Shown here in pieces: positions 7,832-62,369 of a DNA stretch of 64,000 nucleotides. Position 1 is the stretch's first letter. The number at the start of each line of letters is the position of its first letter. The notes beneath the pieces are model-generated. The model was not told the DNA's origin. It saw only the letters and a program-made list of their open reading frames with translations, and did not search any database. The translations under genes were made by a program, and so were the position numbers. Location: positions 186,001 to 250,000 of IMG/VR virus record IMGVR_UViG_3300047445_000186. One strand, given 5' to 3'.

Positions 7832-7840
7832 GGCAGGACC

Positions 7841-8209: not shown

Positions 8210-8248
8210 GATGTTCCTTAGAAGTTCGAACTATTTATTCTGGCCGGA

Positions 8249-9253: not shown

Positions 9254-9254
9254 C

Positions 9255-24709: not shown

Positions 24710-25762
24710 ATGGAACATATGCAATTGGGGCATCTGAACAACGATTTTCGGACGTGCCTGCATCATCTGAATGCGCACGGCATGACTGCGCACCCACGTG
24801 GAACGACCACGAAAGAGCTGCTGAATTACAACATTTCGCTCGGCGATCCACGCAATCGGATCATCAATTTCCCTGATCGGAAGACCAATCTGAAGTACCT
24901 GCTCGGTGAATTCTGCTGGTATCTCGCTGGTGACAACGACCCTGACAGCATCATCCCGTACAGCAAGTTCTGGGACAACATCCGCAATTCTGGCGACATG
25001 CCGGGATACGCGAAGGGCACGATCAATTCGAACTACGGCTATCGTCTGTTCGGTCTGGACAACGAGATGCTCGTTCCGCATGTCGAGAAGGCAATGACTC
25101 CGTACGGTTGCGATGAGACCGGTGCAGTCGTGATCGAGCCGCATGAGACGACAGTGATTCGTGGTCAGAGCCAGTGGGCAGCAGTAGTCGACATGCTCAA
25201 GGCCGACAAGGATTCGCGTCAAGCGATCATGAACATCCATCGCCCAAGTGATCGTCACGTCGGGAACAAGGACGTTGCATGTACCCTGACCCTGCAGTTC
25301 TTCATTCGTGAGAACAAGTTGTTCATGATCACGAACATGCGATCGAACGACATCATTCTCGGCTTCACGAACGACGTGTTCCAGTTCACGATGCTGCAAG
25401 AAGGCCTGATGGTTCAACTGCGTGAAACGTACCCTGAGCTTGAGCTCGGCGCGTACTACCACAATGCAGGTTCGATGCACATCTACGACAGGCACTTCGA
25501 GATGGCGAACAAGATCGTCGCTGACGAACGAGCACTCGAGCTGTCAATGGTTCCAATGGATCGATTCGACTCCGAGATTCTGGACAGCCTGGTCGAGATT
25601 GAAACTGAGTGGCGCAAGGACGGCATGAAGAAGGACTTCAACTTCAATCTGTACACCTCGTACCAGAAGCTCACACCGTACTGGCAGAACCTGATTCAAA
25701 TGTGCTTCGCCGAAGATGGTGAAGCAATGCACGCCGTGTTCGGCATCCCAGAGGAGCATTGA
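24710..25762 (+). CDS. T4 gp42-like dCMP hydroxymethylase/hydroxylase (thymidylate synthase fold)
   Basis: INSNYG, DSRQAIMNIHRPS, catalytic ACT, MRSNDIILGFTND (Asp at the dCMP-specifying position, like gp42 D179) and NAGSMHIYDRHF. Confidence 0.85.
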   Translation: MEHMQLGHLNNDFRTCLHHLNAHGMTAHPRGTTTKELLNYNISLGDPRNRIINFPDRKTNLKYLLGEFCWYLAGDNDPDSIIPYSKFWDNIRNSGDMPGYAKGTINSNYGYRLFGLDNEMLVPHVEKAMTPYGCDETGAVVIEPHETTVIRGQSQWAAVVDMLKADKDSRQAIMNIHRPSDRHVGNKDVACTLTLQFFIRENKLFMITNMRSNDIILGFTNDVFQFTMLQEGLMVQLRETYPELELGAYYHNAGSMHIYDRHFEMANKIVADERALELSMVPMDRFDSEILDSLVEIETEWRKDGMKKDFNFNLYTSYQKLTPYWQNLIQMCFAEDGEAMHAVFGIPEEH

Positions 25763-31394: not shown

Positions 31395-31835
31395 ATGACA
31401 CTAATATTTGAAATCAAAGCGGCCCAATTGGCCGCTCGTAAAGAACGTCGGGCAGCGGATGTTGCTGTGCTGACGACCCTGATCGGTGAGGCGGAAATCA
31501 TCGGCAAGAACGATGGAAATCGCGCAGTCACGGACCAGGAAGTGCAGGCCGTAATTAAGAAGTTCATCAAGAATATCGATGAGGTTCTGAAGGTCGTAAA
31601 TCCTGGGTCTGATCAATTCACGACCGCTCAGGAAGAGAAGATTCTTCTGAGCACGTTCCTGCCTGTGCAGCTCTCTGAAGCTGACCTGCGGCTGATCATT
31701 CAAACCGTGATCGATGCACATCAGCTCGTGGCTCCAAAGGGTCTCGGTGTTCTGATGAAGGAACTGAAGGACTCGCATAACGGCACGTACGATGGTGCGC
31801 TTGCCTCGAAACTTGCAAAGGAATTGTTGAAGTGA
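31395..31835 (+). CDS. GatB/YqeY-domain protein
   Basis: EEKILLSTFLPVQLSEADL, GVLMKELK and YDGALAS match the YqeY pattern. Confidence 0.8.
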   Translation: MTLIFEIKAAQLAARKERRAADVAVLTTLIGEAEIIGKNDGNRAVTDQEVQAVIKKFIKNIDEVLKVVNPGSDQFTTAQEEKILLSTFLPVQLSEADLRLIIQTVIDAHQLVAPKGLGVLMKELKDSHNGTYDGALASKLAKELLK

Positions 31836-33001
31836 AAGTTGGTGTAGTTAAACTTGGTGCTCGCATTACCTGGGAAACCGACGCAGCTGTCGGTCCTGGT
31901 GAAGCGATCTCGATCTGCAAGGCACTCACGCGAGGTGGGGCTGAGGTCCATGTGTTCACGAAGATTCTGGCGAAGGACACGCTCGATCCGTCGATTCAGT
32001 GGCACAATACGGTTGGCAGCGATGCACGTTCAATCCATGCAGGTCAAGACCTCGACACGACCGGTCTCGATGCTCTGCTCGTGATTAACGGGAATGTGAA
32101 CTTCTTCGGTGGCGCCGAAGATCGTGCTCAGATTCTGAATTACACGATCATCAATCGGTTCGCGGGTCCGGTGATCTACGTGATGTGCGACCCTGAACTG
32201 CCGATGCTGCAGATCTGGGAGAACGTCTCGAAGAAGCAAGTCGATCCGAAGTACAACTGGGAGAACGTGTACGCTGAGTCGGACATTCGTGTCACGAAGC
32301 CGATCAATGTGCTCTGCCAGCCGTTCAATGTTCAGGCAATGCAGGAAACGTGGAAGAGCAAGAAGGGCGCTGTGCCACTCGGCACGATGTTCCACTTCCC
32401 GATGGAACGCTTCCCGCTCCTGAACGAGTGGCTAGATTACGCCGAAACTCCGGCAGTCGATCTGCTCTACGGCGGTACGGCTCGTGGTGGGCGCCGCATT
32501 CCGAATCTGTACAAGTGGTACTGCGGTCTGCCTGAAGATCTGAACGTCGAAATCTTCGGCAAGATCGACAATGAAGACTTCGAGAAGCACAACAAGATCG
32601 GGAAGCTTCCAGTGAAACGGTACCCAACGTTCACGGGTATGGTGAAGTACTCTGAAGTGCTACCAAAGATGAACAACGCTCTTGCGCATCTGGTCACTGG
32701 CGATCCGTCGTACGAAACGCTCGATCTGATTCCTCAACGCGTTGCCGAGTGCATCGCCGCTGGGAACATCGTGTTCATCGACGCGAACATCGACAAGAGC
32801 CGTCGGATCTATCCTGTTGGAACCGAGGCGCATGACTTCCTGTACGTGCAGACGCAAGATGAACTCGTCGAGCGACTGCGTGTGCTGAAGGAAGAGCCAA
32901 GTCTGCGCTCCACTCTGTGGCAGCAACAGACGATCGCAACGAACTTCAACGCCGACACGTTCACAAAGTCGTTGGTCACGAAGATCGCGGAGTTCGTATG
33001 A
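31832..33001 (+). CDS. bgt: T4 beta-glucosyltransferase-family DNA glycosyltransferase (GT-B)
   Basis: Colinear with T4 BGT: LLVINGNVNFFGG, DLLYGGTARGGRR, VEIFGK, PTFTG, FIDANIDKSRRI. The sugar donor is not established. Confidence 0.85.
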   Translation: MKVGVVKLGARITWETDAAVGPGEAISICKALTRGGAEVHVFTKILAKDTLDPSIQWHNTVGSDARSIHAGQDLDTTGLDALLVINGNVNFFGGAEDRAQILNYTIINRFAGPVIYVMCDPELPMLQIWENVSKKQVDPKYNWENVYAESDIRVTKPINVLCQPFNVQAMQETWKSKKGAVPLGTMFHFPMERFPLLNEWLDYAETPAVDLLYGGTARGGRRIPNLYKWYCGLPEDLNVEIFGKIDNEDFEKHNKIGKLPVKRYPTFTGMVKYSEVLPKMNNALAHLVTGDPSYETLDLIPQRVAECIAAGNIVFIDANIDKSRRIYPVGTEAHDFLYVQTQDELVERLRVLKEEPSLRSTLWQQQTIATNFNADTFTKSLVTKIAEFV

Positions 33002-34042: not shown

Positions 34043-34729
34043 ATGCACTTCAACACCCCTACACTGGTCACTCTGACCGCCCCATCTTGCGCTGGCAAGA
34101 GTTACCTGCTCGAGGCAATGGTTGACAGCCTTGGCATGCAGCGTATTGTGTCCACCACTGATCGCGCTCCACGAGCCGGTGAAATCGAAGGTGTGCACTA
34201 CAACTTCATCACGACGAACGAATCTCTGCAGTACGAAGCTGAAGGAAAGTTCGCCGAGCTTGTGACGTTCAATGGCACTCGGTACGGTGTCACTCACGAG
34301 GAAATGGAGAAGAAGCTCGTTCCTGGTGCACCAGCTCCGATCGTGATTCTCGAGCCGAACGGTGTGAACATCTACCGCCAGTACTGTGGTTCGAAGAACT
34401 GGTCGATCTTCACCGTGTTCGTCTCGACGCCTGAAGCCGTTCGCCTTGAACGCCTCGCTGCTCGTACCACTGCTGATCTGCTGAACATTGCAGTGAATGG
34501 CGGTGATCTGGAGAAGAGCCTTCTTGCACGCGGCAATTTGTTCGACCGGTTCGAGAAGATCGTTCACGCGAACAACAAGCGCCTGAAGGCGATCATCGAA
34601 CAAGAACGTCTCTGGGCTGCCACGAACCTGTGGGATGCGCAGATCACAGGTCAAGACCTGAACGTTGCACTCTCGCACCTGAAGCAATCGATCGCCAGCC
34701 GTAACGCCCGCTCCGCAATCTACGCCTAA
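34043..34729 (+). CDS. gmk: Guanylate-kinase-family NMP kinase
   Basis: APSCAGKS P-loop, STTDRAPRAGEIEGVHYNF and TFNGTRYG. Confidence 0.85.
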   Translation: MHFNTPTLVTLTAPSCAGKSYLLEAMVDSLGMQRIVSTTDRAPRAGEIEGVHYNFITTNESLQYEAEGKFAELVTFNGTRYGVTHEEMEKKLVPGAPAPIVILEPNGVNIYRQYCGSKNWSIFTVFVSTPEAVRLERLAARTTADLLNIAVNGGDLEKSLLARGNLFDRFEKIVHANNKRLKAIIEQERLWAATNLWDAQITGQDLNVALSHLKQSIASRNARSAIYA

Positions 34730-41502: not shown

Positions 41503-41586
41503 GAACCTATCACTGAGCGCGACGAAAGTTCCCTGACGTCACCTCGTGTCGCCGAGCCTACCTTCAAACCACCTTAGGAGAATGCA

Positions 41587-41844
41587 ATGCCGAAAGAGAA
41601 AGCAGTGATCTTCCGTGTTCTGATCGAGCCGAAGTCCCTCGCCCGCGTGCTTGTCCACGCTGTTGAGCTCGACGCTCAGAACTTCCATGTTCAGGACGAT
41701 CGTGGTGGCACGGGTTACTGGCACGTGAACTTCACCGACATCCAACGGAACGTCGTTCGACAGATCGTCGGTCCTGGCGTCGACATTCAAGATCTCGACG
41801 AACATGGCCGCCCGATCCGGGTGCTAGCCTTCGCTGAGGAGTGA
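41587..41844 (+). CDS. Hypothetical protein
   Basis: RBS AGGAG. Confidence 0.65.
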   Translation: MPKEKAVIFRVLIEPKSLARVLVHAVELDAQNFHVQDDRGGTGYWHVNFTDIQRNVVRQIVGPGVDIQDLDEHGRPIRVLAFAEE

Positions 41845-42053
41845 ACATGGACGAGTTCTACCAATACCACCTGAGCGAACAAGGTCGGGCAGAGATTGCC
41901 AAGAAAGCCGAGGAACTCAGGAAGAAGCTCGAAGAAAGCCGCGAGAAGCGCGTGCCATTCAAGCTGCACGACATCGGCCAGCGCGGGGTTGCTGAAAGCT
42001 GAACGCTATCTGCCACCTAATGCCTGTATAACTCGCACCTCATGGAGAATTGA

Positions 42054-42275
42054 ATGGCTTCGATAGGAAACGGACGATGCTGCTGGGTTCTAGTTCCCGC
42101 GAAAGCAGGACAAGAAGCAGTGTTCTGCGAGAAGCCGACGGGGTACGACATGCCTCGCGACGACGATGGAAATCGACATCGCAAGTACCGCACGTTCTGC
42201 CCAGAGCACGAGGTGATCGCAAGTAAACAGGACGAGGATGAGACTCGTTCGCATGAGGACTACGGGGACTCTTGA
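42054..42275 (+). CDS. Small Cys/His-rich protein (possible Zn finger)
   Basis: CC...C...CPEH pattern; RBS GGAG. Confidence 0.5.
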   Translation: MASIGNGRCCWVLVPAKAGQEAVFCEKPTGYDMPRDDDGNRHRKYRTFCPEHEVIASKQDEDETRSHEDYGDS

Positions 42276-42287
42276 TCCCGAACCCAA

Positions 42288-42806
42288 ATGAAGGTTGCAT
42301 ATGACGTCGTGATTGGTCGGCCAGCGTGTATAGTTCTAGCTATGCGCCTAGGCGCCGACATTGCGACTTCGTTGATCTTCGACAAGAAGCACTGGTTGAT
42401 GGAACAGACCGCGAACATGAGAGTACACGACGTATCGTTCGCGACCCTTCGAAATATGGTGTACCTCTCAGAGGCGCGCTGGAACCAATGGAGCAGAGAG
42501 ATGGACAAACCGCTGGACAAATCTGAAATCACGATTCGCAAGGGTGGTGGAATGTCGATCGTCGGCGCAGACGCCACGAACCTCTACCGCGCCGTGATGC
42601 TCGGGCAGGCACTGAGGATGTACGCGAAGACCAAGATGCTCGCGACACGGAATGCGACTCCGAGCGTGATGCTCAGGATGGCGGCCGAATACTCTGGCAA
42701 GACGTACAAGCGTGGCCAGTACGTGCAGGCGGCCGATGATCTCCAGATCTGGATCGACACCATGAAGGCCGCGTTGCCGATCAACTACGAGGACGAGAAG
42801 TCATGA
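42288..42806 (+). CDS. Hypothetical protein
   Basis: The C-terminal half has strong phage codon bias; the start is uncertain. Confidence 0.55.
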   Translation: MKVAYDVVIGRPACIVLAMRLGADIATSLIFDKKHWLMEQTANMRVHDVSFATLRNMVYLSEARWNQWSREMDKPLDKSEITIRKGGGMSIVGADATNLYRAVMLGQALRMYAKTKMLATRNATPSVMLRMAAEYSGKTYKRGQYVQAADDLQIWIDTMKAALPINYEDEKS

Positions 42807-43027
42807 CCTGGCTGAAGCTCTACCGCTGGTGGAAAGGCGGTCGGTGGGTGAAACACGAGAACAAGTGGTACCTCGCTGACGTGAACGGCTACATCCGCGG
42901 CGAGTGTCTGAGCGACGAAGGGCGACCATCGTACTTCTCATGCCACGCCGATTTCAAGGGGAACCAAGCGGTCGAAGACTACCGCGCCCCGTACAAGAAT
43001 TCCCCATTCAACAAGAAAGCAAAATGA
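42803..43027 (+). CDS. Hypothetical Trp-rich protein
   Basis: ATGA overlaps. Confidence 0.55.
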   Translation: MTWLKLYRWWKGGRWVKHENKWYLADVNGYIRGECLSDEGRPSYFSCHADFKGNQAVEDYRAPYKNSPFNKKAK

Positions 43028-43485
43028 GCTACCGCCTTTACACCTTCGTGAACCACATCTACATGAGCGAGAAGCAGTTCGGTATCCAGACCGCGCACCT
43101 CGTCTCGACGATGATGAACAACGTCGCCGAACTCAAGGGCGAAGACATGCGGTCGTACCACAAGGTGCATGCATGGGCCGCTGAGTCACCAACGATCATC
43201 ATGTGTCAGGGTGGGAACGTTGCAATGCTGACTGAGTTGTACGAGAAGTTGAAGCCTCTCGCAGCCGATCTGCAGTTGCCCGTCGCGAAGTTCCACGAAG
43301 ATGAACAGAGCCTTGGTGGTGTAATCACCTGCGTCGGGGTTCTCGTTCCTGAGTACCTGTTCGACGCTGAAGTGGTATGGATCGCTGGTTCTCCAGTGTT
43401 CACGATCACGCAAGACAACCCGCGCCCTGCAACTCTGCTCGAGAACGAGTTCCTGGGGATCGTGAAGATCGCGCGTCTCGCGTAA
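43024..43485 (+). CDS. PTH2-like (peptidyl-tRNA hydrolase 2 fold) protein
   Basis: GIQTAH, a W..ESPTII segment, FHEDEQSLGGVITCVG. Confidence 0.55.
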   Translation: MSYRLYTFVNHIYMSEKQFGIQTAHLVSTMMNNVAELKGEDMRSYHKVHAWAAESPTIIMCQGGNVAMLTELYEKLKPLAADLQLPVAKFHEDEQSLGGVITCVGVLVPEYLFDAEVVWIAGSPVFTITQDNPRPATLLENEFLGIVKIARLA

Positions 43486-43495
43486 GGAGTCTCCC

Positions 43496-43981
43496 ATGAC
43501 TGATGACAACATTGACAAGTTCTTCAACGATGCAGGGTTCGCCGCTTGGCACGCCAAGATCGCGCTCACGATCGCTAAAAGTGGTCATCAGCTCATGGGC
43601 GTGTTCGATCATGAAGGCACCATGGCAAGCTTCACGTATACGATTGGTCTTGAGAAACAACTCGGATTCGAGCTGATCGTGTTCGGCCTCCCGTACAAAT
43701 ATGCAGGTCTACTTCTGAATTACATCGCGGCTCAAGTGAAAGCTGGCGAAAAGCTGGTCCTCGATGTACCAGATCAGCGGTGGGCGCAGATTCCGCTGCT
43801 GTTCAAGAAGGCCGATGAAAGAGCGCGAGGATACGTGTGCCAAGCTGATCGGTACTACGGGCACGATGTGCAGACCGTCCAGATCGTGCTACCCGATAAG
43901 AATGCTCGTTTTCCTGGAGACGCGGAGTACGATATTGAGTACATGGAACCCCGCCAATCTCTGCTCTATGACCCAACATAA
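43496..43981 (+). CDS. DUF4262-like protein
   Basis: FTYTIGL, ELIVFGLP and VQIVLPD...FP. Confidence 0.65.
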   Translation: MTDDNIDKFFNDAGFAAWHAKIALTIAKSGHQLMGVFDHEGTMASFTYTIGLEKQLGFELIVFGLPYKYAGLLLNYIAAQVKAGEKLVLDVPDQRWAQIPLLFKKADERARGYVCQADRYYGHDVQTVQIVLPDKNARFPGDAEYDIEYMEPRQSLLYDPT

Positions 43982-44360
43982 AATCGTTCACGTCCTCGTT
44001 CCAGTCCATGATCAGGGCCGCAAGGGCCCTGTCGGGGTTTTGATTCTGCATCATGTCGAAACAGAGATGTGGTTCATGCCTGCCGATTACCTTGGCGACG
44101 AGACGGCGAAGGAAGCGGCCTCGAGAATTCTACGGGACCGAACGTTCATCGACATTCCGTCTTCGCAGTTCCGGTTCGTTGCGCATCGTGGAGGCATGAC
44201 TGAAGTGTTCATGCTCTCTCAGACACCCCTGACGGTGGCCGAGGTGGACCGAGTGACACCGACCGGCGAGTATGATATGGCTACACTAGGCTCGCCAGTC
44301 GATGTCCTCGGCTCACGTGTCGAGACTGACATTCTCAGGGATCTTTCGTACTGGTCCTGA
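43968..44360 (+). CDS. Degenerate Nudix-fold protein
   Basis: WFMPADYLGDETAKEAASRILRDRT resembles a Nudix box lacking the REUxEE glutamates. Confidence 0.45.
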   Translation: MTQHKIVHVLVPVHDQGRKGPVGVLILHHVETEMWFMPADYLGDETAKEAASRILRDRTFIDIPSSQFRFVAHRGGMTEVFMLSQTPLTVAEVDRVTPTGEYDMATLGSPVDVLGSRVETDILRDLSYWS

Positions 44361-44389
44361 ACCCGACATCCCGGGTGTGAGGTTCAAGT

Positions 44390-44410
44390 TGTAACGATTT
44401 CGGTTACAAT
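44390..44410 (+). promoter_or_regulatory. TGTAAC-N7-GTTACAAT promoter/operator
   Basis: Inverted repeat overlapping TACAAT, upstream of the isomerase gene. Confidence 0.6.
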
Positions 44411-44438
44411 TACATGCATAGCTTACTGGGAGACATGC

Positions 44439-45179
44439 ATGTCAACAAACCTCGCACTTCAGTGCATTGAACGTCAAATCGAAGCGCTTCGTGCGCTTCC
44501 CACCCTCGTCGAAACCTCGGAGGAATACAAGAAGATCGTCACGATCGTCACTGAGGTCGCGTTGAGCGAGCACGGAGCTCGTGTCCTGCTTGCCGGCGTC
44601 GGCAAGAACTCGAACATCGCGTCCAAGGTCAGTCAGACCATGGCCAGCCTCGGCATTCCGTCGATGCCGTTGAATGTCTCGCACCTTGGTCACGGCGACT
44701 ACGGCTTCATTGGGAAGTACGATGTGATCATTCACATCAGCCGTTCTGGCATGACCCGTGAAATGCTGGAAGGGATCGAGCACATCTCGCTCATTCGCCC
44801 ATTCGTGACGCAAATCCTGATTCACTGCAAGGCCGGCAAGGTCAAGAACGAGCATGCCGAGATTGAGCTCTTCCTGCCTGATGTCCTCGAAGGCGATGAG
44901 CATGGTCTTGCACCAACAACCTCGACGACCGCGCTGCTCTGCATTCTGGATTGCATCTCGGTTCAAGCATCGGCGAACATCGAGTTCGAACGTCTGGACT
45001 TCCTGAAGTTCCACCCTGATGGCGCACTCGGCGAAATGCTGAAGGCCGAGAAGGCGAAGAAGGTTCACACTGATATTTCGGCCGCCGTTCCTGTCGAAGG
45101 CGTGCCAATCAATGATCCAGCGATCGCAGCATTGGTCACTCCTGAATCCGCTGAAGCAGCACGAAAGTTGGTTGTATGA
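44439..45179 (+). CDS. kdsD: SIS-domain D-arabinose-5-phosphate isomerase (KdsD/GutQ-like, no CBS pair)
   Basis: GVGKNSNIASK, HGDYGFI, ISRSGMTRE, APTTSTT and FHPDGALG. Confidence 0.85.
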   Translation: MSTNLALQCIERQIEALRALPTLVETSEEYKKIVTIVTEVALSEHGARVLLAGVGKNSNIASKVSQTMASLGIPSMPLNVSHLGHGDYGFIGKYDVIIHISRSGMTREMLEGIEHISLIRPFVTQILIHCKAGKVKNEHAEIELFLPDVLEGDEHGLAPTTSTTALLCILDCISVQASANIEFERLDFLKFHPDGALGEMLKAEKAKKVHTDISAAVPVEGVPINDPAIAALVTPESAEAARKLVV

Positions 45180-45337
45180 ACGTCGTAAACATTGGCCTCA
45201 AGACCTTTGACGACGCGGGCCTGGATTGGGATGCGTTCGTGTCGCTGAAACACGAGAATGGAAACACTGAAGACATCCGCCTCACTGAACTTATTGAACG
45301 GATCGTAGAGCGGAAGATCAAGGAAAAACAAGAATGA
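45176..45337 (+). CDS. Hypothetical protein (53 aa)
   Basis: ATGA overlaps with both kdsD and the NTP transferase gene. Confidence 0.6.
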   Translation: MNVVNIGLKTFDDAGLDWDAFVSLKHENGNTEDIRLTELIERIVERKIKEKQE

Positions 45338-46944
45338 ATATCGTGATTGTTGCGGGTGGGCTTGGTTCCCGCCTCGCTCCACTGACAAACAACGTGCCGA
45401 AGTTCCTCGTGAACATCGGGAAGAACACGGGGTATGTGGAGCAAGTTCGGTACTGGGCGAAGCAAATTGATTTTTCTCCGTTCAGCGAAACAAATGACAC
45501 GCTCACCGTGATCGTTCACAGCGCGTACGAAGCTCTGATCAATGCGTACCACAAGGTGTACTTCCCGAACATTCCGCTGATCGTGCAAACGGTTGACGTG
45601 GCGAACGGCTCTGCACACGCGATCTTGAGTACATGTCGTCATTTGAACGGCAAGCCAGTGGTCTTCCAGTGGTGCGACGTTATGCCTGCCGTTCCGCTTC
45701 CAGATTTCGACAAGGAACAGAACGCGATCTTCACGAACTACGATCACTCAAATCGCTATGGCCTTTCGTATGCGAAGACTCCAGGCGGTGGGTGCATTCC
45801 TACACCTCAGCCGGATGGCAAGGGTGGTGTGTTCGGCATGTACTACATCGCGAACTTCCACACGAGTGTGACGTCCCATGATGGTGAAGACTTCGTTGAC
45901 GTGATCACCCAGTACGGCAAGATCCAAGAAGTGAAGCTTGATGGCATCATCGACTGGGGCGACATGCCTAAGCTGAATCAGACCCGTGATACGGCTGATG
46001 CCGCACGTGAGTTCAACAGCATCTCGGTCCAAGGGAACTTGGTCATGAAGTCCGCGCTGAACAAGCAGGGCGAAACGCTGATCGCTCGTGAGATCAATTG
46101 GTACCGCAAGGTCCACAAGGATGGGTACGGCGTTTCGATCCCTGAGATCTGGCCAGCAGATGACGGCAAGAGCTTCATCATGGACAAGGTCGAAGGCGAG
46201 CCGATCTTCAAGGTCTGGCCTGCACTTGATCCTCAAGGACGTGGAATCGTTCTGCGGAAGATCTTCGAGCAGCTCGATCGCCTCCATGACGATGGTGATC
46301 TGTTCGCCGTAGGGACTGACACTGTTCTGCGTGACGTGAAGATCGAAGCTTGTGACAAGCTCCTTGCTCGCTATCGCGAAATCAAGGACGTGATCAAGGC
46401 GTTCGGCCCTATCACGCACGTGAACGGTCTGTACATCGGCGATCTGAATCCAGAGGTCACGATCCACAAGCTGTACGCACGTCTGCACGAGCACTATGCT
46501 GGCACAGAAGATTACAGCATGATCCACGGTGATCTGCAGATGTCGAACAGCATGATCGATACCAGCAATCTCGAAGTGTCGTTCATCGACCCACGCGGTT
46601 ATTTCGGCAAGAGCGAGCTCATGGGTCTGCCAGATTACGACATCGCGAAGGTTTACTACAGCCTGAGCGGGTACGATCTGTTTAACTACAGCCGCGATTT
46701 CCACATCAAGGAACTCGCTGACGGACATCTGGAGTTCGAGATTCCGAAGCCGAATCTCGATGGATGCGAAGACGTGATGGGTGAGCGATTCTGGCACCAA
46801 CATCGCCTGTGGCTCGCGGTGATCTGGATCGGTCTTGCAGGGTACATCAAGAACGACCCGGTGAAATCACTGTGCGCGCACTACCACGGCCTCGCGATCG
46901 CGGAACAAATCTTCCGCGACACGTTCGATCCGTTCAAGCCATGA
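45334..46944 (+). CDS. Bifunctional sugar nucleotidyltransferase + APH/choline-kinase-family kinase
   Basis: N-terminal VAGGLGSRLAPLT...PKFLV and WCD; C-terminal IHGDLQMSN, FIDPRG and YDIAK. Confidence 0.85.
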   Translation: MNIVIVAGGLGSRLAPLTNNVPKFLVNIGKNTGYVEQVRYWAKQIDFSPFSETNDTLTVIVHSAYEALINAYHKVYFPNIPLIVQTVDVANGSAHAILSTCRHLNGKPVVFQWCDVMPAVPLPDFDKEQNAIFTNYDHSNRYGLSYAKTPGGGCIPTPQPDGKGGVFGMYYIANFHTSVTSHDGEDFVDVITQYGKIQEVKLDGIIDWGDMPKLNQTRDTADAAREFNSISVQGNLVMKSALNKQGETLIAREINWYRKVHKDGYGVSIPEIWPADDGKSFIMDKVEGEPIFKVWPALDPQGRGIVLRKIFEQLDRLHDDGDLFAVGTDTVLRDVKIEACDKLLARYREIKDVIKAFGPITHVNGLYIGDLNPEVTIHKLYARLHEHYAGTEDYSMIHGDLQMSNSMIDTSNLEVSFIDPRGYFGKSELMGLPDYDIAKVYYSLSGYDLFNYSRDFHIKELADGHLEFEIPKPNLDGCEDVMGERFWHQHRLWLAVIWIGLAGYIKNDPVKSLCAHYHGLAIAEQIFRDTFDPFKP

Positions 46945-47171
46945 ACGAAGGCACGTTCAGTGCCGAAGATTTGGTAGCGTGCTATGCGCCGCCAAATCTT
47001 CGCTCAGTAATGCCTGGGAACAAAGTGATGCTCCGCTCTGGCGGGCCAGAGATGATCGTTACTGGCGTTGACGCCGGTGGCTACGCAATTTGCGTGTGGC
47101 CAAATGACGCTGGGATCCTACAGCGCCGAGCATTCGCTCTCGAATGCTTGACTTGTTATGGTGCTAAGTAA
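46941..47171 (+). CDS. YodC/DUF2158-like protein
   Basis: VMLRSGGPEMIV...ICVW. Confidence 0.7.
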   Translation: MNEGTFSAEDLVACYAPPNLRSVMPGNKVMLRSGGPEMIVTGVDAGGYAICVWPNDAGILQRRAFALECLTCYGAK

Positions 47172-47224
47172 GGCGCTTGCCACCGCGAAGCCACCACAAC
47201 CAAAGGTTCCAACCGTGTGCCATA

Positions 47225-47773
47225 TCAGACCTTGATCTCTTTGCCGTTGCAGTAGTACATCTTTGCATCAGGCTTAACCGTCTGCGTTCCGCGCTCTACC
47301 ACAATCCCGTGTTCTTCGATGAACTTGAAGAACTCGGGCGTCAGGTCACGAGCGCGAAGCCCGTAGAAGTGGAACTGCACTGGCATTGGAATCTGGCCAT
47401 TGATTGCAGCGAACGCATCTGAACGAGCGCGGCCTTCATGGCCCTTGACCTTCACGGCTTCAGGAGCTTCTGGCTCTCCTTCGATGTCCAAGATCAGAAA
47501 TGGCGCGCCGATCGCCTTCCCATCACGCATCTTCTGCTCGAGGTTCTTCGCGTCATCGGCGCGATCCGCTTCCAACGCAAGCTTGCGGAACGTGTTCGGC
47601 TTCATCCAAGCCACGCAGCCGCGGTACATCACGTTCGCGTTATTAGGCGTTGCGCCCAGACCATCCACATTGTCGAACGTCGTATTTCCAACGTTGTAAA
47701 CGCCGTCCACGTTGTTCGGCGACGGCAGGGATTCGTTCAGGTTCGAGACTTCTTGGAGCAGTTTCATGATCAT
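47225..47773 (-). CDS. Hypothetical protein, possible ParB/Srx-like domain
   Basis: APFL...GHEGRAR motif; TAAATA at 47792-47797. Confidence 0.5.
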   Translation of the reverse strand: MIMKLLQEVSNLNESLPSPNNVDGVYNVGNTTFDNVDGLGATPNNANVMYRGCVAWMKPNTFRKLALEADRADDAKNLEQKMRDGKAIGAPFLILDIEGEPEAPEAVKVKGHEGRARSDAFAAINGQIPMPVQFHFYGLRARDLTPEFFKFIEEHGIVVERGTQTVKPDAKMYYCNGKEIKV

Positions 47774-47859
47774 GCAAGGTATGTGAACCCGTATTTACGC
47801 TGCCAGAACGAGGTTACGCGATGTACGATTCACCATCGCATCACTAACCTGGAGACAAA

Positions 47860-48141
47860 ATGCGTTCTGGCAGTTTTGGTTACCGTGAAAATGGCGGCTC
47901 GAAGGTCACAAAGGCCTCGCTGCAAGAAGGAATCTTCTCGATGGATTTCATCAGCACGCTGCAGCACCAGCCGCTGGACATCGCGAAACAGGTCTGTCTC
48001 GAGCGAATCGACAATTCGACCGCCACGCCCGAGAACAAGATGAAGGCGCAACAAGCGGTCACGAAGGCAGCCAGCCTGAAGAATCTTCTCCTCACGACTT
48101 CGAACTTCAGCCTCGCGCATCAAGGCATGAAAGTTCTGTAA
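47860..48141 (+). CDS. Hypothetical protein
   Basis: TG-TACGAT box and RBS TGGAG upstream. Confidence 0.65.
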   Translation: MRSGSFGYRENGGSKVTKASLQEGIFSMDFISTLQHQPLDIAKQVCLERIDNSTATPENKMKAQQAVTKAASLKNLLLTTSNFSLAHQGMKVL

Positions 48142-48186
48142 CGGTTACCGACTCGTTACAGAGTCGGCCCAGGTTTGGTGTACAAT
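48137..48186 (+). promoter_or_regulatory. TGTAAC-N12-GTTACA-N20-TACAAT promoter, copy 3
   Basis: GTTACA 48155-48160, TG-TACAAT 48181-48186. Confidence 0.7.
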
Positions 48187-48214
48187 GCACCATCGCATCA
48201 AACCTGGAGCTTGA

Positions 48215-48439
48215 ATGCCGCGAACGCAAGACGAACTCTCGGCTGCTTTTGACCTCGTCAAGAACAGCACGCACTGGAAGAAGCCGATCAACGCACGTGT
48301 CGCCCTGACGGATGAGCAGGTCGACGCCGTGCACGAAGCCGTGATCCACTTCACTGGCTCGATCGCCACGATCACGAACCTCCCGAACGGCAAGCGCCAC
48401 GTCCGCGCCGCCGGGTACTACGCCACGATCGGAGCTTGA
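48215..48439 (+). CDS. Hypothetical protein
   Basis: RBS TGGAG; C-terminal VRAAGYYATIG. Confidence 0.7.
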   Translation: MPRTQDELSAAFDLVKNSTHWKKPINARVALTDEQVDAVHEAVIHFTGSIATITNLPNGKRHVRAAGYYATIGA

Positions 48440-48440
48440 C

Positions 48441-48728
48441 ATGCTGAAGTTCAAACTGGGCCAGCGCGTCGTCGCGACCCGCACGATCCACAAAGGCGCC
48501 GTTGGCACGATCGCGATGATCCCCTCCTCGCTGCGCGAAGGCAAACGCTGGGTGTACGTCCAGCGCGATGATCGCGTGTCGCCGACCTGGTTCTTCGAGG
48601 ACGAGCTCGAGGCGACGACCGAGCGCGTTCAAGACCTTCGCGCTCGCCTTGCCGTGATGCAGAACGACCCCACGCACGCCTTGATGGCGACCACCATTTC
48701 CAAACTGATCGGAGAACCGAATGTCTGA
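48441..48728 (+). CDS. Hypothetical protein, SH3/KOW-like
   Basis: FKLGQRVV...KGAVGTI. Confidence 0.6.
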   Translation: MLKFKLGQRVVATRTIHKGAVGTIAMIPSSLREGKRWVYVQRDDRVSPTWFFEDELEATTERVQDLRARLAVMQNDPTHALMATTISKLIGEPNV

Positions 48729-49017: not shown

Positions 49018-49276
49018 GTTGCTCAGCATCAACGACGTCTGGGACGCTCGTCGTGTCTCGAAGTACCTCGGGCCCATGCTGGTCGATCTCGAAGATTCGA
49101 TTATGAAGACCCCGACGGGGCCGGCCCGCGACGTCCTGACCGAGGCGAACATCCTCGTGATGCAGGCCCAGGCGCTCCTTCACGCGTTCGATGGGCGATG
49201 CGTGAAGGAGCACTACCAGCGCACGCCAGAAGATTGGGCGGCCGAGCTCCCAAAGGACGGAGGGCATGATGCCTGA
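49004..49276 (+). CDS. Hypothetical protein
   Basis: RBS GAGGG; overlaps both neighbours. Confidence 0.6.
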   Translation: MAKSKLLSINDVWDARRVSKYLGPMLVDLEDSIMKTPTGPARDVLTEANILVMQAQALLHAFDGRCVKEHYQRTPEDWAAELPKDGGHDA

Positions 49277-50132
49277 AGGACCTGAAGTGAAACGGATCGC
49301 GGCGGGCCTCGAGTCCCTCCAAGGGAAGACGATCGCAAGCGGGCAAGTCGTGTCGGGCCGTTATCTGCGCGGCCAAGAGATCACGTTCGAGACGATCATC
49401 GGCGCGAAGGTCGAGCGCGTGATCTGCAAGGGGAAGCTGATCGCGTTTCACTTGAAGGGTGCCGAGGGGCCGCTGGCGATCTTGAGCACGATGGGGATGA
49501 TGGGCCGTTGGATCGTCTTGACCGAGGCGAACAGCGACTTGGATGCGCACCGTCGTGTCGAGCTCACGTTCGATGACGGCACAATCGCCGCGTTCTTCGA
49601 CCCTCGGAATTTCGGCACGTTCAAGATCGTGTCGTACGCCGAGATGAAGCGGAAAATGCAGGAGCTCGGCCCCGACATCCTCACGGCGCCAGGGCACTGG
49701 CATGCAATCGCCCTGCCCGAGTTCTACGAGCGCGTTCGCCGATTTGGCAAGGATCTCTCGCTTGCCGAAGGGCTTCTGGACCAACGAATCTGCTCTGGCT
49801 GTGGGAACTACATCAGGGCCGACGCGATGTGGCTGGCGCGCTTCTCGCCCAAACGGCGCATGTCCGAGATGACTGACGCCGATCTGAAGCGGATCTGGAT
49901 CGCGATGCATGAAATCGCGATCGCGGCGGCCGAGAACAAGGTCCCACCACTGCACATGGACGGCGAAGGGCATCACAGCGCTCTGATCCAGATCTCGAAA
50001 GAGATCAGCGCCGTCGGCGAATTCTTCAACCTCGCTTATGGCCAGCCCGAAACTGCAAGTGGCGGTATGATCGAGTCTTACAAGGACTCGAATGGTCGCA
50101 CGGTGTGGTGGTGCCCCAAGGAACAGAAATGA
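49269..50132 (+). CDS. Fpg/Nei-family DNA glycosylase/AP lyase
   Basis: N-terminal MPEGPEV, KGK, MGMMG and H2TH LLDQRICSGCGNYIRADAMW; no four-Cys zinc finger. Confidence 0.9.
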   Translation: MPEGPEVKRIAAGLESLQGKTIASGQVVSGRYLRGQEITFETIIGAKVERVICKGKLIAFHLKGAEGPLAILSTMGMMGRWIVLTEANSDLDAHRRVELTFDDGTIAAFFDPRNFGTFKIVSYAEMKRKMQELGPDILTAPGHWHAIALPEFYERVRRFGKDLSLAEGLLDQRICSGCGNYIRADAMWLARFSPKRRMSEMTDADLKRIWIAMHEIAIAAAENKVPPLHMDGEGHHSALIQISKEISAVGEFFNLAYGQPETASGGMIESYKDSNGRTVWWCPKEQK

Positions 50133-60423: not shown

Positions 60424-60427
60424 GGGC

Positions 60428-60847: not shown

Positions 60848-60882
60848 TGTAGCTCAGGTTTCATGCGCCTTACAATAGGTGC

Positions 60883-61431
60883 ATGACACTCACAGACAAA
60901 AGCAAGTTCCTCGCGTTCTTGCTGAGGCATAAGCCGCAAGAAGCAAACCTGATTCTCGACAAGCAGGGCTGGTGCCCGATCGCTGACATCACAGCGAACA
61001 CCGAGATCACCTTCGAAGATTTGATCTCGATTGTCGACACCGATAAAAAGGGTCGGTACTCGTTCGATCAGCCGAAGCAGTCCTCGCAAGCGCCGACAAA
61101 AATCCGCGCAAATCAAGGGCACAGCACCGACAAGGTCAAGCTCTCGTTCAAGACGGCCGTTCCTCCAGTCGTTCTGTACCATGGCACTTCAGCCGAAGCT
61201 GCCGTTCAAATCTGCCGCATTGGCCTGCTCGCGATGAGCCGCCATCACGTCCATCTCTCTGCTGACATCGAGACTGCCCGCACCGTCGCATCCCGGCGTA
61301 AGGGCAAGACAGCGATGTTCCTCGTGGACGCTAAGCGAATGCTCGCCGACGGGTTGAAGTTCCAGCTCTCTGAGAATGGAGTCTGGTTGGTTGACGCCGT
61401 ACCCGCTAAGTACCTTACACAGGAAACTTAA
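60883..61431 (+). CDS. kptA: RNA 2'-phosphotransferase (KptA/Tpt1)
   Basis: SKFLAFLLRH, IRANQGHS, LYHGT, RHHVHLS and SENGVWLV. Confidence 0.92.
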   Translation: MTLTDKSKFLAFLLRHKPQEANLILDKQGWCPIADITANTEITFEDLISIVDTDKKGRYSFDQPKQSSQAPTKIRANQGHSTDKVKLSFKTAVPPVVLYHGTSAEAAVQICRIGLLAMSRHHVHLSADIETARTVASRRKGKTAMFLVDAKRMLADGLKFQLSENGVWLVDAVPAKYLTQET

Positions 61432-62369
61432 TGGATAACATGTACACCTTCGAAGACGAATACCTGGATCTGCTCGATTTCATTCTGAAGCGCGGCGAAG
61501 ACCGCGGTGATCGCACTGGAACTGGAACACGCGCCGTGTTCGGCCAGCGCCTGCAGATTGATTTGAAGCAGGGTTTTCCGATCATGACGACCAAGAAGGT
61601 CGGTCTGAAGTCAATCATCTCTGAGCTCCTCTGGTTCGTTGAAGGCAGTGGTGATGAGCGGCGTCTGTGTGAGATTCTGTACGGTACCCGTGACGCTGCA
61701 AAGCGCACAATCTGGACCGACAATGCGAACTCCTCGTACTGGAAGCCGAACGCAGAATTTGAGGGTGACCTCGGACGCGTCTACGGTGTTCAGTGGAGGC
61801 ACTGGAAGAGTCTTACACTGAAAGAATCCGGGGCCCACGTCGATCATTCTGGTGGTTCCGAGACACATTTCGACGCGAAGGTTCTCGTGCAAGAGGTCGA
61901 TCAACTGAAGCGAGTGATCGATACCCTGAAGACGAACCCGACCGATCGTCGTCTCGTCCTGACGGCCTGGAACCCAGGCGAACTCGGCTCGATGGCTCTG
62001 CCACCATGCCACATGTTCGCGCAGTTCTTCTTGTCGAACAAGAACGAGCTGAGCTGCCAAATGTACCAGCGCTCGGTTGACGTGTTCCTCGGCTTGCCGT
62101 ACAACATCGCGTCGTACGCAGCACTGACGCACATGATTGCTCGAGTGATCGGTGCTGAGGTTGGTGAGCTGATCATGGTTCTCGGCGACACGCACATTTA
62201 TCAGAATCACATCGATCAAGTGAAGCTCCAGCTCAGCCGCGAACGATTCGATCTGCCAAAGCTCGTGATCAGCGGTGAGCAAAAATCCATTGACGATTTC
62301 AAGCTCGCCGATTTCTCCCTTGAAGGTTACCAGTGTCACGAAGCGATCAACGCCACAATGGCGATCTGA
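61431..62369 (+). CDS. thyA: Thymidylate synthase (canonical, dUMP-specific)
   Basis: DRTGTGT, ELLWF, PTDRR, MALPPCH, YQRSVDVFLGLPYNIASY (Asn) and DTHIYQNH. Confidence 0.95.
   Translation: MDNMYTFEDEYLDLLDFILKRGEDRGDRTGTGTRAVFGQRLQIDLKQGFPIMTTKKVGLKSIISELLWFVEGSGDERRLCEILYGTRDAAKRTIWTDNANSSYWKPNAEFEGDLGRVYGVQWRHWKSLTLKESGAHVDHSGGSETHFDAKVLVQEVDQLKRVIDTLKTNPTDRRLVLTAWNPGELGSMALPPCHMFAQFFLSNKNELSCQMYQRSVDVFLGLPYNIASYAALTHMIARVIGAEVGELIMVLGDTHIYQNHIDQVKLQLSRERFDLPKLVISGEQKSIDDFKLADFSLEGYQCHEAINATMAI

What the first reader, a model, noticed from the sequence alone, without database searches (positions are those of the whole stretch)
44439..46944. SIS isomerase plus nucleotidyltransferase/APH-kinase fusion: a compact NDP-sugar pathway
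Seen: a CBS-less KdsD-like isomerase is translationally coupled, through a 53-aa ORF, to a 536-aa protein with an N-terminal GGLGSR nucleotidyltransferase and a C-terminal HGD...IDP kinase domain. Established: the ADP-heptose pathway uses an SIS isomerase, a bifunctional kinase/nucleotidyltransferase and a phosphatase (GmhA, HldE, GmhB). AmgK (APH-fold anomeric kinase) and MurU form a similar pair. Inference: Ru5P to Ara5P to Ara-1,5-P2 to Ara-1-P to NDP-Ara, with the phosphatase not recognised in this window.
Basis: partly seen in the sequence, partly recalled or inferred. Interest (0 to 1): 0.72.

Follow-up and report, generated by a model that had tools for sequence, protein, structure and literature searches.

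The report
Jumbo-phage UDP-arabinose genes for DNA sugar-coating
These two genes of an uncultured 332-kb phage are relatives of a recently characterised phage pathway that makes UDP-arabinose to sugar-coat phage DNA, but here they sit with T4-type hydroxymethylcytosine genes and without the usual phosphatase.

Summary
In detail: three overlapping + strand ORFs at 44439-46944 encode a CBS-less SIS isomerase, an orphan 53-aa ORF, and a 536-aa nucleotidyltransferase/APH-kinase fusion.

There, an arabinose-5-phosphate isomerase, bifunctional AfhE and the phosphatase AfhF make UDP-arabinose to arabinosylate 5-hydroxycytosine in phage DNA. The window's proteins match RB69 and DLP1 orthologues over full length (45-48% and 30-37% identity), and all motifs are intact.

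The gene pair is therefore a new member of a known kind. The setting differs:
- **Host genome:** a 331,776-bp jumbo phage, distantly related to Ralstonia phage RsoM2USA.
- **Base-modifying enzyme:** its thymidylate-synthase homologue carries the T4 gp42 signature (Asp169 kept), not the Asn169 signature of the 5-hydroxycytosine enzymes.
- **Transferase:** the DNA glycosyltransferase is a T4 beta-glucosyltransferase homologue.
- **Phosphatase:** no AfhF homologue exists in this genome or in its near-complete relatives.

My best reading is UDP-arabinose supply for glycosylating 5-hydroxymethylcytosine DNA. The acceptor and the phosphatase step are inferred, not shown.

The parts
44439..45179 (+). 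Arabinose-5-phosphate isomerase: SIS domain only, no CBS pair. The conserved core is residues 1-208; residues 209-246 are a tail unique to this genome.
   Evidence: PHROG 5670 at 8.7e-66. PDB 5uqi, 3etn and 2xhz at 2e-20 to 1.5e-12. 45% identity to RB69 gp55 and 48% to the DLP1 isomerase. KdsD K59, H88, E111, E152 and H193 are invariant in alignment A4. Homology to relatives ends near residue 208.
45176..45337 (+). Orphan 53-aa ORF with ATGA overlaps on both sides. Coding status is uncertain and it is not part of the conserved module.
   Evidence: No Pfam or PHROG match. No tblastn match in 17 related loci, RsoM2USA or G001. Relatives have the isomerase abutting the fusion gene, or gaps of variable length.
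45334..46944 (+). AfhE-like bifunctional enzyme. Residues 1-228 form a sugar-1-phosphate nucleotidyltransferase domain; residues ~222-530 form an APH-fold sugar kinase domain.
   Evidence: PHROG 4098 at 1e-115. tblastn finds 369 phage records at 97% coverage and 27-37% identity. 30% identity to RB69 gp53 and 36% to gp52. Motifs are invariant across 32 homologues. AF2 model pLDDT 94.1, with two-domain fold matches.
24710..25762 (+). Divergent thymidylate-synthase homologue with the dCMP hydroxymethylase (T4 gp42) active-site signature.
   Evidence: PF00303 at 8e-22. Best PDB matches are MilA and T4 gp42. Alignment shows Cys146 kept, residues 168-169 = ND as in T4 gp42 (RB69 gp48 and DLP1 have QN), and Asn177 replaced by Asp.
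31832..33001 (+). T4 beta-glucosyltransferase-family DNA glycosyltransferase, the candidate transferase for the sugar.
   Evidence: PF09198 at 3.7e-17. PHROG 7922 at 4e-46. BLASTP to T4 b-gt gives 26% identity over 369 aa, 3e-36, with T4 E22, D100, R191, R195, R269 and E272 aligned to identical residues. It is the only PF09198 match in the genome.
34043..34729 (+). Guanylate-kinase-like protein, a candidate kinase for the modified dCMP.
   Evidence: PF00625 at 4.8e-15. PHROG 1815. Conserved in G001, L045 and L046 near the module and absent from RsoM2USA. The role is inferred only.
61431..62369 (+). Canonical thymidylate synthase. It shows that the divergent copy is an extra, specialised enzyme.
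   Evidence: PF00303 at 6.8e-101, 334 bits.
49266..50132 (+). Fpg/Nei-family DNA glycosylase. It is a conserved downstream neighbour of the module in this clade; its link to the module is unknown.
   Evidence: PF01149 at 3.9e-20. Found downstream in L043, L045 and G001 and in 6 of the jumbo-clade IMG/VR loci. Absent from RsoM2USA.
43496..43981 (+). DUF4262 protein, a frequent upstream neighbour of the module. It is not a phosphatase by fold.
   Evidence: PF14081 at 9e-23. Upstream of the SIS gene in L045, G001 and L043. Atlas structure neighbours are DUF4261/SUFU-like. Also present in RsoM2USA.

Best explanation
The window lies in a 331,776-bp uncultured jumbo phage. The genes at 44439-46944 are its sugar-nucleotide supply module.

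Proposed route:
1. The SIS isomerase converts host ribulose-5-phosphate to D-arabinose-5-phosphate.
2. The C-terminal APH-fold kinase domain of the 536-aa enzyme phosphorylates C1, giving arabinose-1,5-bisphosphate.
3. A phosphatase removes the 5-phosphate. It is not the AfhF type, and it is either a host enzyme or an unrecognised phage enzyme.
4. The N-terminal nucleotidyltransferase domain condenses arabinose-1-phosphate with an NTP, probably UTP, to give NDP-arabinose.

The sugar nucleotide is then used to glycosylate the phage's own DNA. In this lineage the acceptor is most likely 5-hydroxymethylcytosine, made by the T4 gp42-type thymidylate-synthase homologue at 24710-25762. The transferase is most likely the T4 beta-glucosyltransferase homologue at 31832-33001.

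Shown here: homology, domain folds, intact motifs, and conserved gene pairing and gene content. Inferred: every catalytic step, the nucleotide used, the phosphatase, and which base and which transferase receive the arabinose.
For: **Orthology to the characterised module**
- The isomerase is 45-48% identical to RB69 gp55 and the DLP1 isomerase. The fusion protein is 30-37% identical over 97% of its length to the RB69 gp52:53 / DLP1 gp80 class.
- PMC13326640 section 27 equates these proteins with the biochemically characterised AfhE.

**Catalytic features are intact**
- KdsD K59, H88, E111, E152 and H193 are invariant in the isomerase alignment.
- The G-x-G-x-R...PK, HGD...N and IDPRGYFG motifs are invariant in 32 homologues.
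- The two-domain fold is modelled with confidence.

**The pairing is conserved**
- The isomerase and fusion genes are adjacent in T4-like phages, in 12 jumbo-clade loci, in G008, and in some more distant loci.

**DNA-modification context**
- The genome carries an extra thymidylate-synthase homologue with C146, D169 and D177 as in T4 gp42.
- It carries a single T4 b-gt homologue in which T4 BGT residues E22, D100, R191, R195, R269 and E272 align to identical residues. Their catalytic and UDP-binding roles are recalled from memory.
- A canonical ThyA is also present.
- The module sits among replication and repair genes: helicases, topoisomerase II and Fpg.

**Comparative genomics**
- Relatives G001-G005 all combine the module with a b-gt homologue and a D169-type synthase.
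- The nearest isolate, RsoM2USA, has the b-gt homologue and the D169-type synthase but lacks the module.
- In the independent jumbo contig G008 the genes lie on one strand within 8 kb in the order isomerase, fusion enzyme, b-gt homologue, AfhF-like HAD.
Against: - No activity has been measured for any protein of this lineage.
- The AfhF phosphatase is absent. In T4-like phages it always lies directly downstream. Here PHROG 1238, a local HMM, PF13419 and PF08645 all find nothing, and G002-G005 also lack it. The published route is therefore incomplete here unless another enzyme substitutes.
- The b-gt homologue is also present in RsoM2USA, which lacks the module. It could simply use host UDP-glucose, with the arabinose going elsewhere: to a second sugar, to another transferase such as the GT4-like gene at G000:C1:128217-129359, or to a non-DNA target.
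- The 5hmC call rests on one diagnostic residue proposed in a single paper (PMC13326640, section 28).
- No dCTPase of the MazG type was found.
- The nucleotide (UTP versus another NTP) and the ring form of the sugar are unknown.
Confidence: 0.7

Rival explanations
1. The module is the same, but the acceptor base is 5-hydroxycytosine as in RB69 and DLP3. On this view the Asp169 signature does not predict the product in this divergent thymidylate-synthase branch, and the system is an ordinary ara-5hoC system in a new phage lineage.
For: - All experimentally characterised arabinosylated phage DNAs carry the sugar on 5hoC (abstract).
- The best PDB match of the window enzyme, MilA, is also the best match reported for the 5hoC synthases.
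- A jumbo-phage fragment, G007, does combine a fusion-enzyme homologue (44% identity) with an Asn169 synthase and an Aat-like transferase.
Against: - The window enzyme and all its clade relatives keep Asp169 with the RSND...ND motif shared with T4 gp42. Every 5hoC synthase aligned here has Asn169.
- No homologue of the RB69/DLP Aat transferases is present.
- The only dedicated DNA transferase homologue belongs to the 5hmC-specific T4 b-gt family.
Confidence: 0.15
2. The NDP-arabinose is not used for DNA. It feeds glycosylation of virion proteins, or remodelling of a host surface polysaccharide, as an auxiliary metabolic function.
For: - Full-length homologues of the fusion enzyme occur in giant-virus metagenome bins and other distant contigs with no thymidylate-synthase or DNA transferase gene within 6 kb.
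- In the window's clade the module is about 12 kb from the b-gt homologue and 20 kb from the synthase, so it is not clustered with them.
- A GT4-like transferase of unknown target exists elsewhere in the genome.
Against: - The only demonstrated role of this enzyme family is DNA arabinosylation.
- The module lies among DNA metabolism genes.
- In G008 it is interleaved with a b-gt homologue.
- The GT4-like gene is shared with RsoM2USA, which lacks the module.
Confidence: 0.1
3. The fusion protein is a LicA/LicC-like or AmgK/MurU-like enzyme acting on another substrate (choline to CDP-choline, or an amino sugar to its UDP derivative), and the isomerase next to it is functionally unrelated.
For: - The structural neighbours of the two domains include LicC (Z 20.5) and the choline kinase LicA (Z 15.1), as well as MurU (Z 19.2) and aminoglycoside kinases.
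- Sequence similarity to any solved enzyme is marginal.
Against: - The isomerase is adjacent to the fusion gene in several independent viral lineages.
- Homologues in RB69-like phages are tied to arabinose in DNA, and AfhE was shown to act on arabinose-5-phosphate.
- Fold similarity alone does not define substrate.
Confidence: 0.05

Closest known systems
UDP-arabinose module of arabinosyl-5-hydroxycytosine phages: arabinose-5-phosphate isomerase, AfhE and AfhF of HY126; RB69 gp55, gp52:53 and gp51; DLP3 gp83, gp82 and gp81
   Same: - The isomerase and the bifunctional kinase/pyrophosphorylase are homologous over their full length.
- Gene order is the same (isomerase, then fusion enzyme).
- Motifs and the two-domain fold are the same.
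- It is phage-encoded and lies among DNA metabolism genes.
   Different: - There is no AfhF phosphatase anywhere in the genome.
- The partner thymidylate-synthase homologue has Asp169, not Asn169.
- There are no Aat-type transferases.
- The host genome is a 332-kb jumbo phage, not a ~170-kb T4-like phage.
- The module is not clustered with the base-modifying genes.
T4 glucosyl-5-hydroxymethylcytosine system (gp42 dCMP hydroxymethylase plus beta-glucosyltransferase)
   Same: - An extra thymidylate-synthase homologue carries the gp42 active-site pattern.
- There is a full-length b-gt homologue in which six T4 BGT residues (E22, D100, R191, R195, R269, E272) align to identical residues.
- A canonical ThyA is present as well.
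   Different: - T4 uses host UDP-glucose and encodes no sugar-nucleotide pathway. This phage adds an NDP-arabinose module.
- No alpha-glucosyltransferase was looked for, and no MazG-type dCTPase was found.
Ralstonia phage RsoM2USA (MG752970), the nearest cultured relative
   Same: It shares topoisomerase II (46% identity), the b-gt homologue (39-42%), the D169-type synthase (37%), ThyA, the GT4-like transferase and many core genes.
   Different: It lacks the isomerase, the fusion enzyme, the guanylate-kinase-like gene, the Fpg-like gene and the HAD_SAK_2 gene. Its DNA modification has not been studied.
ADP-heptose pathway (GmhA, HldE, GmhB) and the AmgK/MurU recycling pair
   Same: - The logic is the same as ADP-heptose synthesis: SIS isomerase, anomeric kinase, phosphatase, nucleotidyltransferase.
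- The N-terminal domain has a MurU-like fold (Z 19.2).
   Different: - These are analogies, not homology for the kinase. By my own knowledge the HldE kinase is ribokinase-like, whereas this one is APH-fold.
- AmgK itself was not among the listed structural matches.

Membership tests
AfhE-type bifunctional arabinose-5-phosphate kinase / UDP-arabinose pyrophosphorylase | Full-length homology to the RB69 gp52:53 / DLP gp80-82 class | tested here: met
   tblastn covers 97% at 27-37% identity, E to 4e-78. PHROG 4098 at 1e-115. BLASTP to RB69 gp53 gives 1e-24 and to gp52 gives 6e-49.
AfhE-type bifunctional arabinose-5-phosphate kinase / UDP-arabinose pyrophosphorylase | N-terminal sugar-1-phosphate nucleotidyltransferase domain plus C-terminal APH-fold kinase domain, with catalytic motifs | tested here: met
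   Pfam finds both domains above cut-off. VIA gives Z 19-22 for residues 1-228 and Z 15-17 for residues 222-530. GGLGSR...PK, HGD..N and IDPRGYFG are invariant.
AfhE-type bifunctional arabinose-5-phosphate kinase / UDP-arabinose pyrophosphorylase | Kinase activity on Ara5P and pyrophosphorylase activity giving UDP-arabinose | not testable with these tools
   Needs enzyme assays. The activity is known only for the HY126 AfhE, as summarised in PMC13326640.
Phage UDP-arabinose module (isomerase + AfhE + AfhF) | AfhF-type HAD phosphatase encoded next to AfhE | tested here: not met
   PHROG 1238 finds nothing in the genome and a local HMM of RB69 gp51 and DLP1 gp79 finds nothing. It is absent from G002-G005 and from all 12 jumbo-clade loci, but present directly downstream in the T4-like loci.
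KdsD/GutQ-type arabinose-5-phosphate isomerase | SIS domain homologous to solved arabinose-5-phosphate isomerases, with catalytic residues | tested here: met
   PDB 5uqi, 3etn and 2xhz match at 2e-20 to 1.5e-12. KdsD K59, H88, E111, E152 and H193 are invariant in A4. The roles of these residues are recalled from the literature, not tested here.
KdsD/GutQ-type arabinose-5-phosphate isomerase | C-terminal CBS domain pair | tested here: not met
   No counterpart in alignment A4 and no CBS match in Pfam. The phage isomerases of RB69 and DLP1 lack it too.
Arabinosyl-5-hydroxycytosine DNA hypermodification system (RB69/DLP3 type) | 5hodCMP synthase with Asn at E. coli ThyA position 169 | tested here: not met
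   The window enzyme and G001-G005, G008 and RsoM2USA have Asp169. RB69 gp48, DLP1 and G007 have Asn169.
Arabinosyl-5-hydroxycytosine DNA hypermodification system (RB69/DLP3 type) | Aat-type GT-B arabinosyltransferases (PHROG 3891 / 8302 class) | tested here: not met
   tblastn of three DLP1 transferases against the genome gives only E of 0.67 or worse.
T4-type glycosyl-5-hydroxymethylcytosine system | dCMP hydroxymethylase-type thymidylate-synthase homologue (Cys146, Asp169, Asn177 replaced by Asp) | tested here: met
   Alignments. T4 gp42 is a PDB match at 1e-16. The product itself was not tested.
T4-type glycosyl-5-hydroxymethylcytosine system | Beta-glucosyltransferase homologue with catalytic and UDP-binding residues | tested here: met
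   PF09198 at 3.7e-17. BLASTP to T4 b-gt at 3e-36, with E22, D100, R191, R195, R269 and E272 aligned to identical residues. The roles of these residues are recalled from memory.
T4-type glycosyl-5-hydroxymethylcytosine system | dCTPase to exclude cytosine from DNA | tested here: inconclusive
   There is no MazG (PF03819) match in the genome. The T4 gp56 family was not searched.
ADP-heptose pathway (GmhA/HldE/GmhB) | HldE-type kinase and adenylyltransferase domains | tested here: not met
   The domains found are APH-fold and RmlA/MurU-like. The resemblance is one of pathway logic only.

The most novel reading that the evidence does not exclude
A widespread clade of ~310-380-kb jumbo phages decorates 5-hydroxymethylcytosine, not 5-hydroxycytosine, with arabinose. 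A T4 beta-glucosyltransferase-family enzyme has switched donor to NDP-arabinose. This would give arabinosyl-5hmC, the base once proposed for RB69 and later revised. The pathway runs without the AfhF phosphatase, so a non-homologous phosphatase, a host enzyme, or a different intermediate must be involved.
Probability: 0.35. Interest if true: 0.7.

Novelty: new variant of a known kind. Interest (0 to 1): 0.45.

Why it matters
Sugar-coated DNA decides which restriction, CRISPR and type IV systems can stop a phage. So far arabinosylation is known only on 5-hydroxycytosine, in T4-like phages.

If this jumbo-phage clade puts arabinose on 5-hydroxymethylcytosine through a b-gt-family enzyme, three things would follow:
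- A new natural DNA base would be added to the list.
- It would show that sugar-supply modules and base-modifying modules are mixed and matched between phage lineages.
- It would provide a b-gt variant with a pentose donor, which may be useful for 5hmC labelling chemistry.

The missing phosphatase also marks a concrete gap in the pathway that can be tested. If the acceptor instead turns out to be ordinary, the finding is simply a correct annotation of a known pathway in a new lineage.

Tried and rejected
- **Nucleotide search:** megablast of the 2.5-kb region against phage records found nothing.
- **Neighbours of the isomerase tested as the missing phosphatase:**
  - 42904-43485 (PHROG 3668 'hydrolase') has no PDB match and only a weak PTH2 hint, and RsoM2USA has it too.
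  - 43968-44360 has no match anywhere.
  - DUF4262 has a SUFU/DUF4261-like fold.
- **Family searches for a phosphatase in the genome:**
  - PF13419, PF08645 and PF00300 found nothing.
  - PF00149 gave two matches. The one at C1:135303 lies in an ORF with a tblastn match in RsoM2USA; the one at C1:81390 was not examined further.
- **The only HAD-type gene, G000:C1:131535-132107 (PF18143, 2.8e-14):**
  - It is present in G002 and G004, but not in G003 or RsoM2USA.
  - It belongs to a general viral HAD family.
  - It has no PDB sequence match.
  - Its AlphaFold model was poor (pLDDT 52.6), so no fold search was run.
  - It remains a weak candidate only.
- **GT4-like transferase at C1:128217-129359:** considered as the arabinosyltransferase, but RsoM2USA shares it.
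- **Promoter and terminator scan of 41500-48500:** nothing above the shuffled expectation.
- **Papers not in the library:** the primary papers on HY126 (He et al.) and on the Serratia/Bas46 phages (Mahler et al.) could not be read. Their content is cited only through PMC13326640.
- **No complex prediction was run**, because no binding claim is made.
Full report
**1. The observation**

Both junctions are ATGA overlaps.

The 246-aa protein matches only the SIS domain in Pfam, weakly. It matches PHROG 5670 'arabinose 5-phosphate isomerase' at 8.7e-66 and the solved isomerases 5uqi, 3etn and 2xhz at 2e-20 to 1.5e-12. Aligned with E. coli KdsD it has no CBS pair. KdsD positions K59, H88, E111, E152 and H193 are invariant; I recall these as the catalytic residues from the literature.

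The 536-aa protein has GGLGSR at residues 8-13, HGD at 398-400 and IDP at 418-420. Pfam finds NTP_transferase and APH, both above cut-off. An AlphaFold model built on 32 homologues is confident (pLDDT 94.1, pTM 0.91). Residues 1-228 match sugar-1-phosphate nucleotidyltransferases: RmlA at Z 21.7, LicC at 20.5 and MurU at 19.2. Residues 222-530 match the aminoglycoside, choline, fructosamine and methylthioribose kinase fold at Z 15-17.

The 53-aa ORF and the last ~38 residues of the isomerase have no homologue in 17 related loci. In several relatives a 215-221-aa isomerase abuts the fusion gene directly. In others the gap varies from about 280 bp to 2.7 kb. The small ORF is a private insertion at a variable spot, and its coding status is open.

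**2. What the window is**

The window is bases 186001-250000 of a single 331,776-bp IMG/VR virus record, with a CheckV completeness estimate of 94%. It carries tail-fibre genes, helicases, topoisomerase II and other phage replication genes. The nearest cultured phage by topoisomerase II is the 344-kb Ralstonia phage RsoM2USA, at 46% identity. This is an uncultured jumbo phage.

**3. The pathway is already known**

PMC13326640 (Nucleic Acids Res. 2026) reports that RB69 and Acinetobacter phage DLP3 replace cytosine by mono- to tri-arabosylated 5-hydroxycytosine. Section 27 lays out the sugar supply, drawing on biochemistry done on phage HY126:

1. An arabinose-5-phosphate isomerase (RB69 gp55, DLP3 gp83) turns Ru5P into Ara5P.
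2. The C-terminal kinase domain of the bifunctional AfhE (RB69 gp52:53, DLP3 gp82) makes Ara-1,5-P2.
3. The HAD phosphatase AfhF (RB69 gp51, DLP3 gp81) removes the 5-phosphate.
4. The N-terminal domain of AfhE makes UDP-arabinofuranose.

The window proteins are homologues of these enzymes:

- The isomerase is 45% identical to RB69 gp55 (8e-59) and 48% identical to the DLP1 isomerase.
- The fusion protein matches 369 phage records at about 97% coverage and 27-37% identity, mostly T4-like phages.
- It is 30% identical to RB69 gp53, 36% to gp52 and 35% to DLP1 gp80.

The gene order (isomerase, then fusion enzyme) is the same as in RB69 and DLP1. I could not read the primary HY126 paper or the Mahler et al. 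paper. What I say of them comes from PMC13326640.

**4. What differs here**

*(a) The phosphatase.* In every T4-like locus fetched from IMG/VR, an AfhF homologue lies directly downstream of the fusion gene, followed by the thymidylate-synthase homologue and an Aat-type transferase. In all 12 loci of the window's clade (fusion enzyme 50-62% identical), none of these lies within 6 kb.

Genome-wide, PHROG 1238 (the AfhF family), a local HMM of RB69 gp51 and DLP1 gp79, HAD_2 and PNK3P all find nothing. The relatives G002 (336 kb, 98% complete), G003, G004 (343 kb, terminal repeats) and G005 also lack AfhF.

*(b) The base-modifying enzyme.* The genome has a canonical ThyA (61431-62369, 334 bits) and a divergent homologue (24710-25762). 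The divergent copy aligns as follows with E. coli ThyA, T4 gp42, RB69 gp48 and the DLP1 enzyme:

- It keeps Cys146.
- It has Asp at position 177, which indicates a cytosine substrate.
- It reads RSND at positions 166-169, like T4 gp42. The two 5-hydroxycytosine synthases read RSQN.

PMC13326640 section 28 proposes Asn169 as diagnostic for 5hodCMP synthases. By my own knowledge, Asp169 contacts the folate pterin in thymidylate synthase, which fits these enzymes having changed cofactor. All clade relatives, G008 and RsoM2USA keep Asp169. One jumbo fragment, G007, has Asn169.

*(c) The transferase.* No homologue of the DLP1 Aat transferases is present. Instead, 31832-33001 is the genome's only T4 beta-glucosyltransferase-family gene. 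It is 26% identical to T4 b-gt over 369 residues (3e-36). T4 residues E22, D100, R191, R195, R269 and E272 align to identical residues. I recall their roles from memory.

Among cultured phages this family occurs in RsoM2USA and in glucosyl-5hmC phages. No record appears in both the listed rows of that search and those of the fusion-enzyme search. Both lists are only samples, so this is suggestive rather than conclusive.

**5. Comparative evidence for a link**

G001-G005 all combine the module with a b-gt homologue, a D169-type synthase and ThyA. RsoM2USA has the b-gt homologue, the D169-type synthase and ThyA, but no fusion enzyme and no isomerase. The arabinose module is therefore an add-on to a 5hmC-plus-b-gt backbone.

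In the independent 278-kb contig G008, the genes lie on one strand within 8 kb in this order: SIS isomerase, fusion enzyme, one ORF, b-gt homologue, three unknown ORFs, AfhF-like HAD. That genome's synthase keeps Asp169. This is the best evidence that b-gt-family enzymes work with this sugar module.

It is not proof for the window's phage. There the b-gt gene could still use host UDP-glucose, as it presumably does in RsoM2USA.

**6. The missing phosphatase**

The neighbours of the isomerase gave nothing. The only HAD-superfamily gene is at G000:C1:131535-132107, outside the window:

- It carries motif I (FLDIDGVL) and matches PF18143 at 2.8e-14.
- It lies near a GT4-like transferase and a non-specific endonuclease gene.
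- It is present in G002 and G004, and absent from G003 (87% complete) and from RsoM2USA.
- It belongs to a general viral HAD family.
- Its model was too poor to search with.

I rate it a weak candidate. A host phosphatase such as GmhB is at least as likely.

**7. How widespread**

More than 120 protein clusters at 42-65% identity to the fusion enzyme exist in public metagenomes. Many sit on contigs of 270-383 kb. More distant full-length homologues (26-30% identity) occur in giant-virus metagenome bins, some with a SIS gene beside them.

**8. Verdict**

As a gene pair it is a new member of a known kind.

As a system it is a variant: a jumbo-phage host, a T4 gp42-type synthase, a b-gt-type transferase and no AfhF. 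I found no paper in the searchable library describing this combination.

I put 0.7 on NDP-arabinose synthesis for DNA glycosylation. I put about 0.35 on the more novel reading, that the product is arabinosyl-5-hydroxymethylcytosine made by a b-gt-family enzyme.

Noticed in passing
window 59398-63362: A run of genes linked to NAD or ADP-ribose and to RNA ends: cpYpsA SLOG protein (59398-60021), Tpt1/KptA RNA 2'-phosphotransferase (60883-61431, 9e-45) and a Macro domain protein (62841-63362). They flank the canonical ThyA. The same set recurs in relatives L043 and L045. It may be a counter-defence or RNA-repair set.
   Followed up: no
window 56645-58401: Two adjacent DnaJ/DnaJ_C paralogues (303 and 282 aa) lie downstream of the topoisomerase II genes.
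   Followed up: no
L082 (IMGVR_UViG_3300014204_000108, 278 kb) 5255-13175: A compact single-strand cluster: SIS isomerase, fusion enzyme, T4 b-gt homologue, three unknown ORFs of 345, 143 and 350 aa, and an AfhF-like HAD. The genome's synthase keeps Asp169. It is a good system for testing arabosylation of 5hmC.
   Followed up: partly
L059 (IMGVR_UViG_3300028874_000010, 112-kb fragment): A fusion-enzyme homologue (44% identity) lies next to an Asn169-type synthase and an Aat-like transferase, with no AfhF in the fragment. Large phages of both synthase types therefore exist.
   Followed up: partly
L085-L108 and others (IMG/VR GVMAG records): Full-length homologues of the fusion enzyme (26-30% identity) occur in giant-virus metagenome bins. 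Some have a SIS gene beside them, and none has a thymidylate-synthase or DNA transferase gene within 6 kb. Contamination of the bins by phage contigs was not excluded.
   Followed up: no
G000:C1:128217-132107 (outside the window): A cluster of a GT4-like glycosyltransferase, an AAA_28 kinase-like protein, a DNA/RNA non-specific endonuclease (1e-43) and the HAD_SAK_2 protein. The transferase and the kinase-like gene are shared with RsoM2USA; the endonuclease and the HAD are not.
   Followed up: partly
window 49266-50132: An Fpg/Nei-family DNA glycosylase is a conserved downstream neighbour of the arabinose module in this clade and is absent from RsoM2USA. What a base-excision enzyme does next to a DNA-glycosylation module is unexplained.
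   Followed up: partly
window 35383-35904: A nucleoside 2-deoxyribosyltransferase-like protein (PF15891, 2e-29) is conserved in G001, L045 and RsoM2USA (61% identity). It lies next to the guanylate-kinase-like gene. The family includes nucleotide N-glycosidases, so it could help deplete canonical dCMP.
   Followed up: no
window 45050-45337 and the same position in L048, L050, L051, L057, L059: The space between the isomerase and the fusion gene varies from 0 to about 2.7 kb among relatives. It appears to be a hot spot for small insertions.
   Followed up: partly
G000:C1:321589-330471 (outside the window): A single 2,960-aa ORF on the minus strand is conserved in G001 (57% identity) and RsoM2USA (30%).
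   Followed up: no
whole genome: A preprint on phages of ammonia-oxidising bacteria reports a 338.7-kb jumbo phage, 'roc1' (10.64898/2026.05.02.722434). Its size is close to this record's. Kinship and host were not tested.
   Followed up: no
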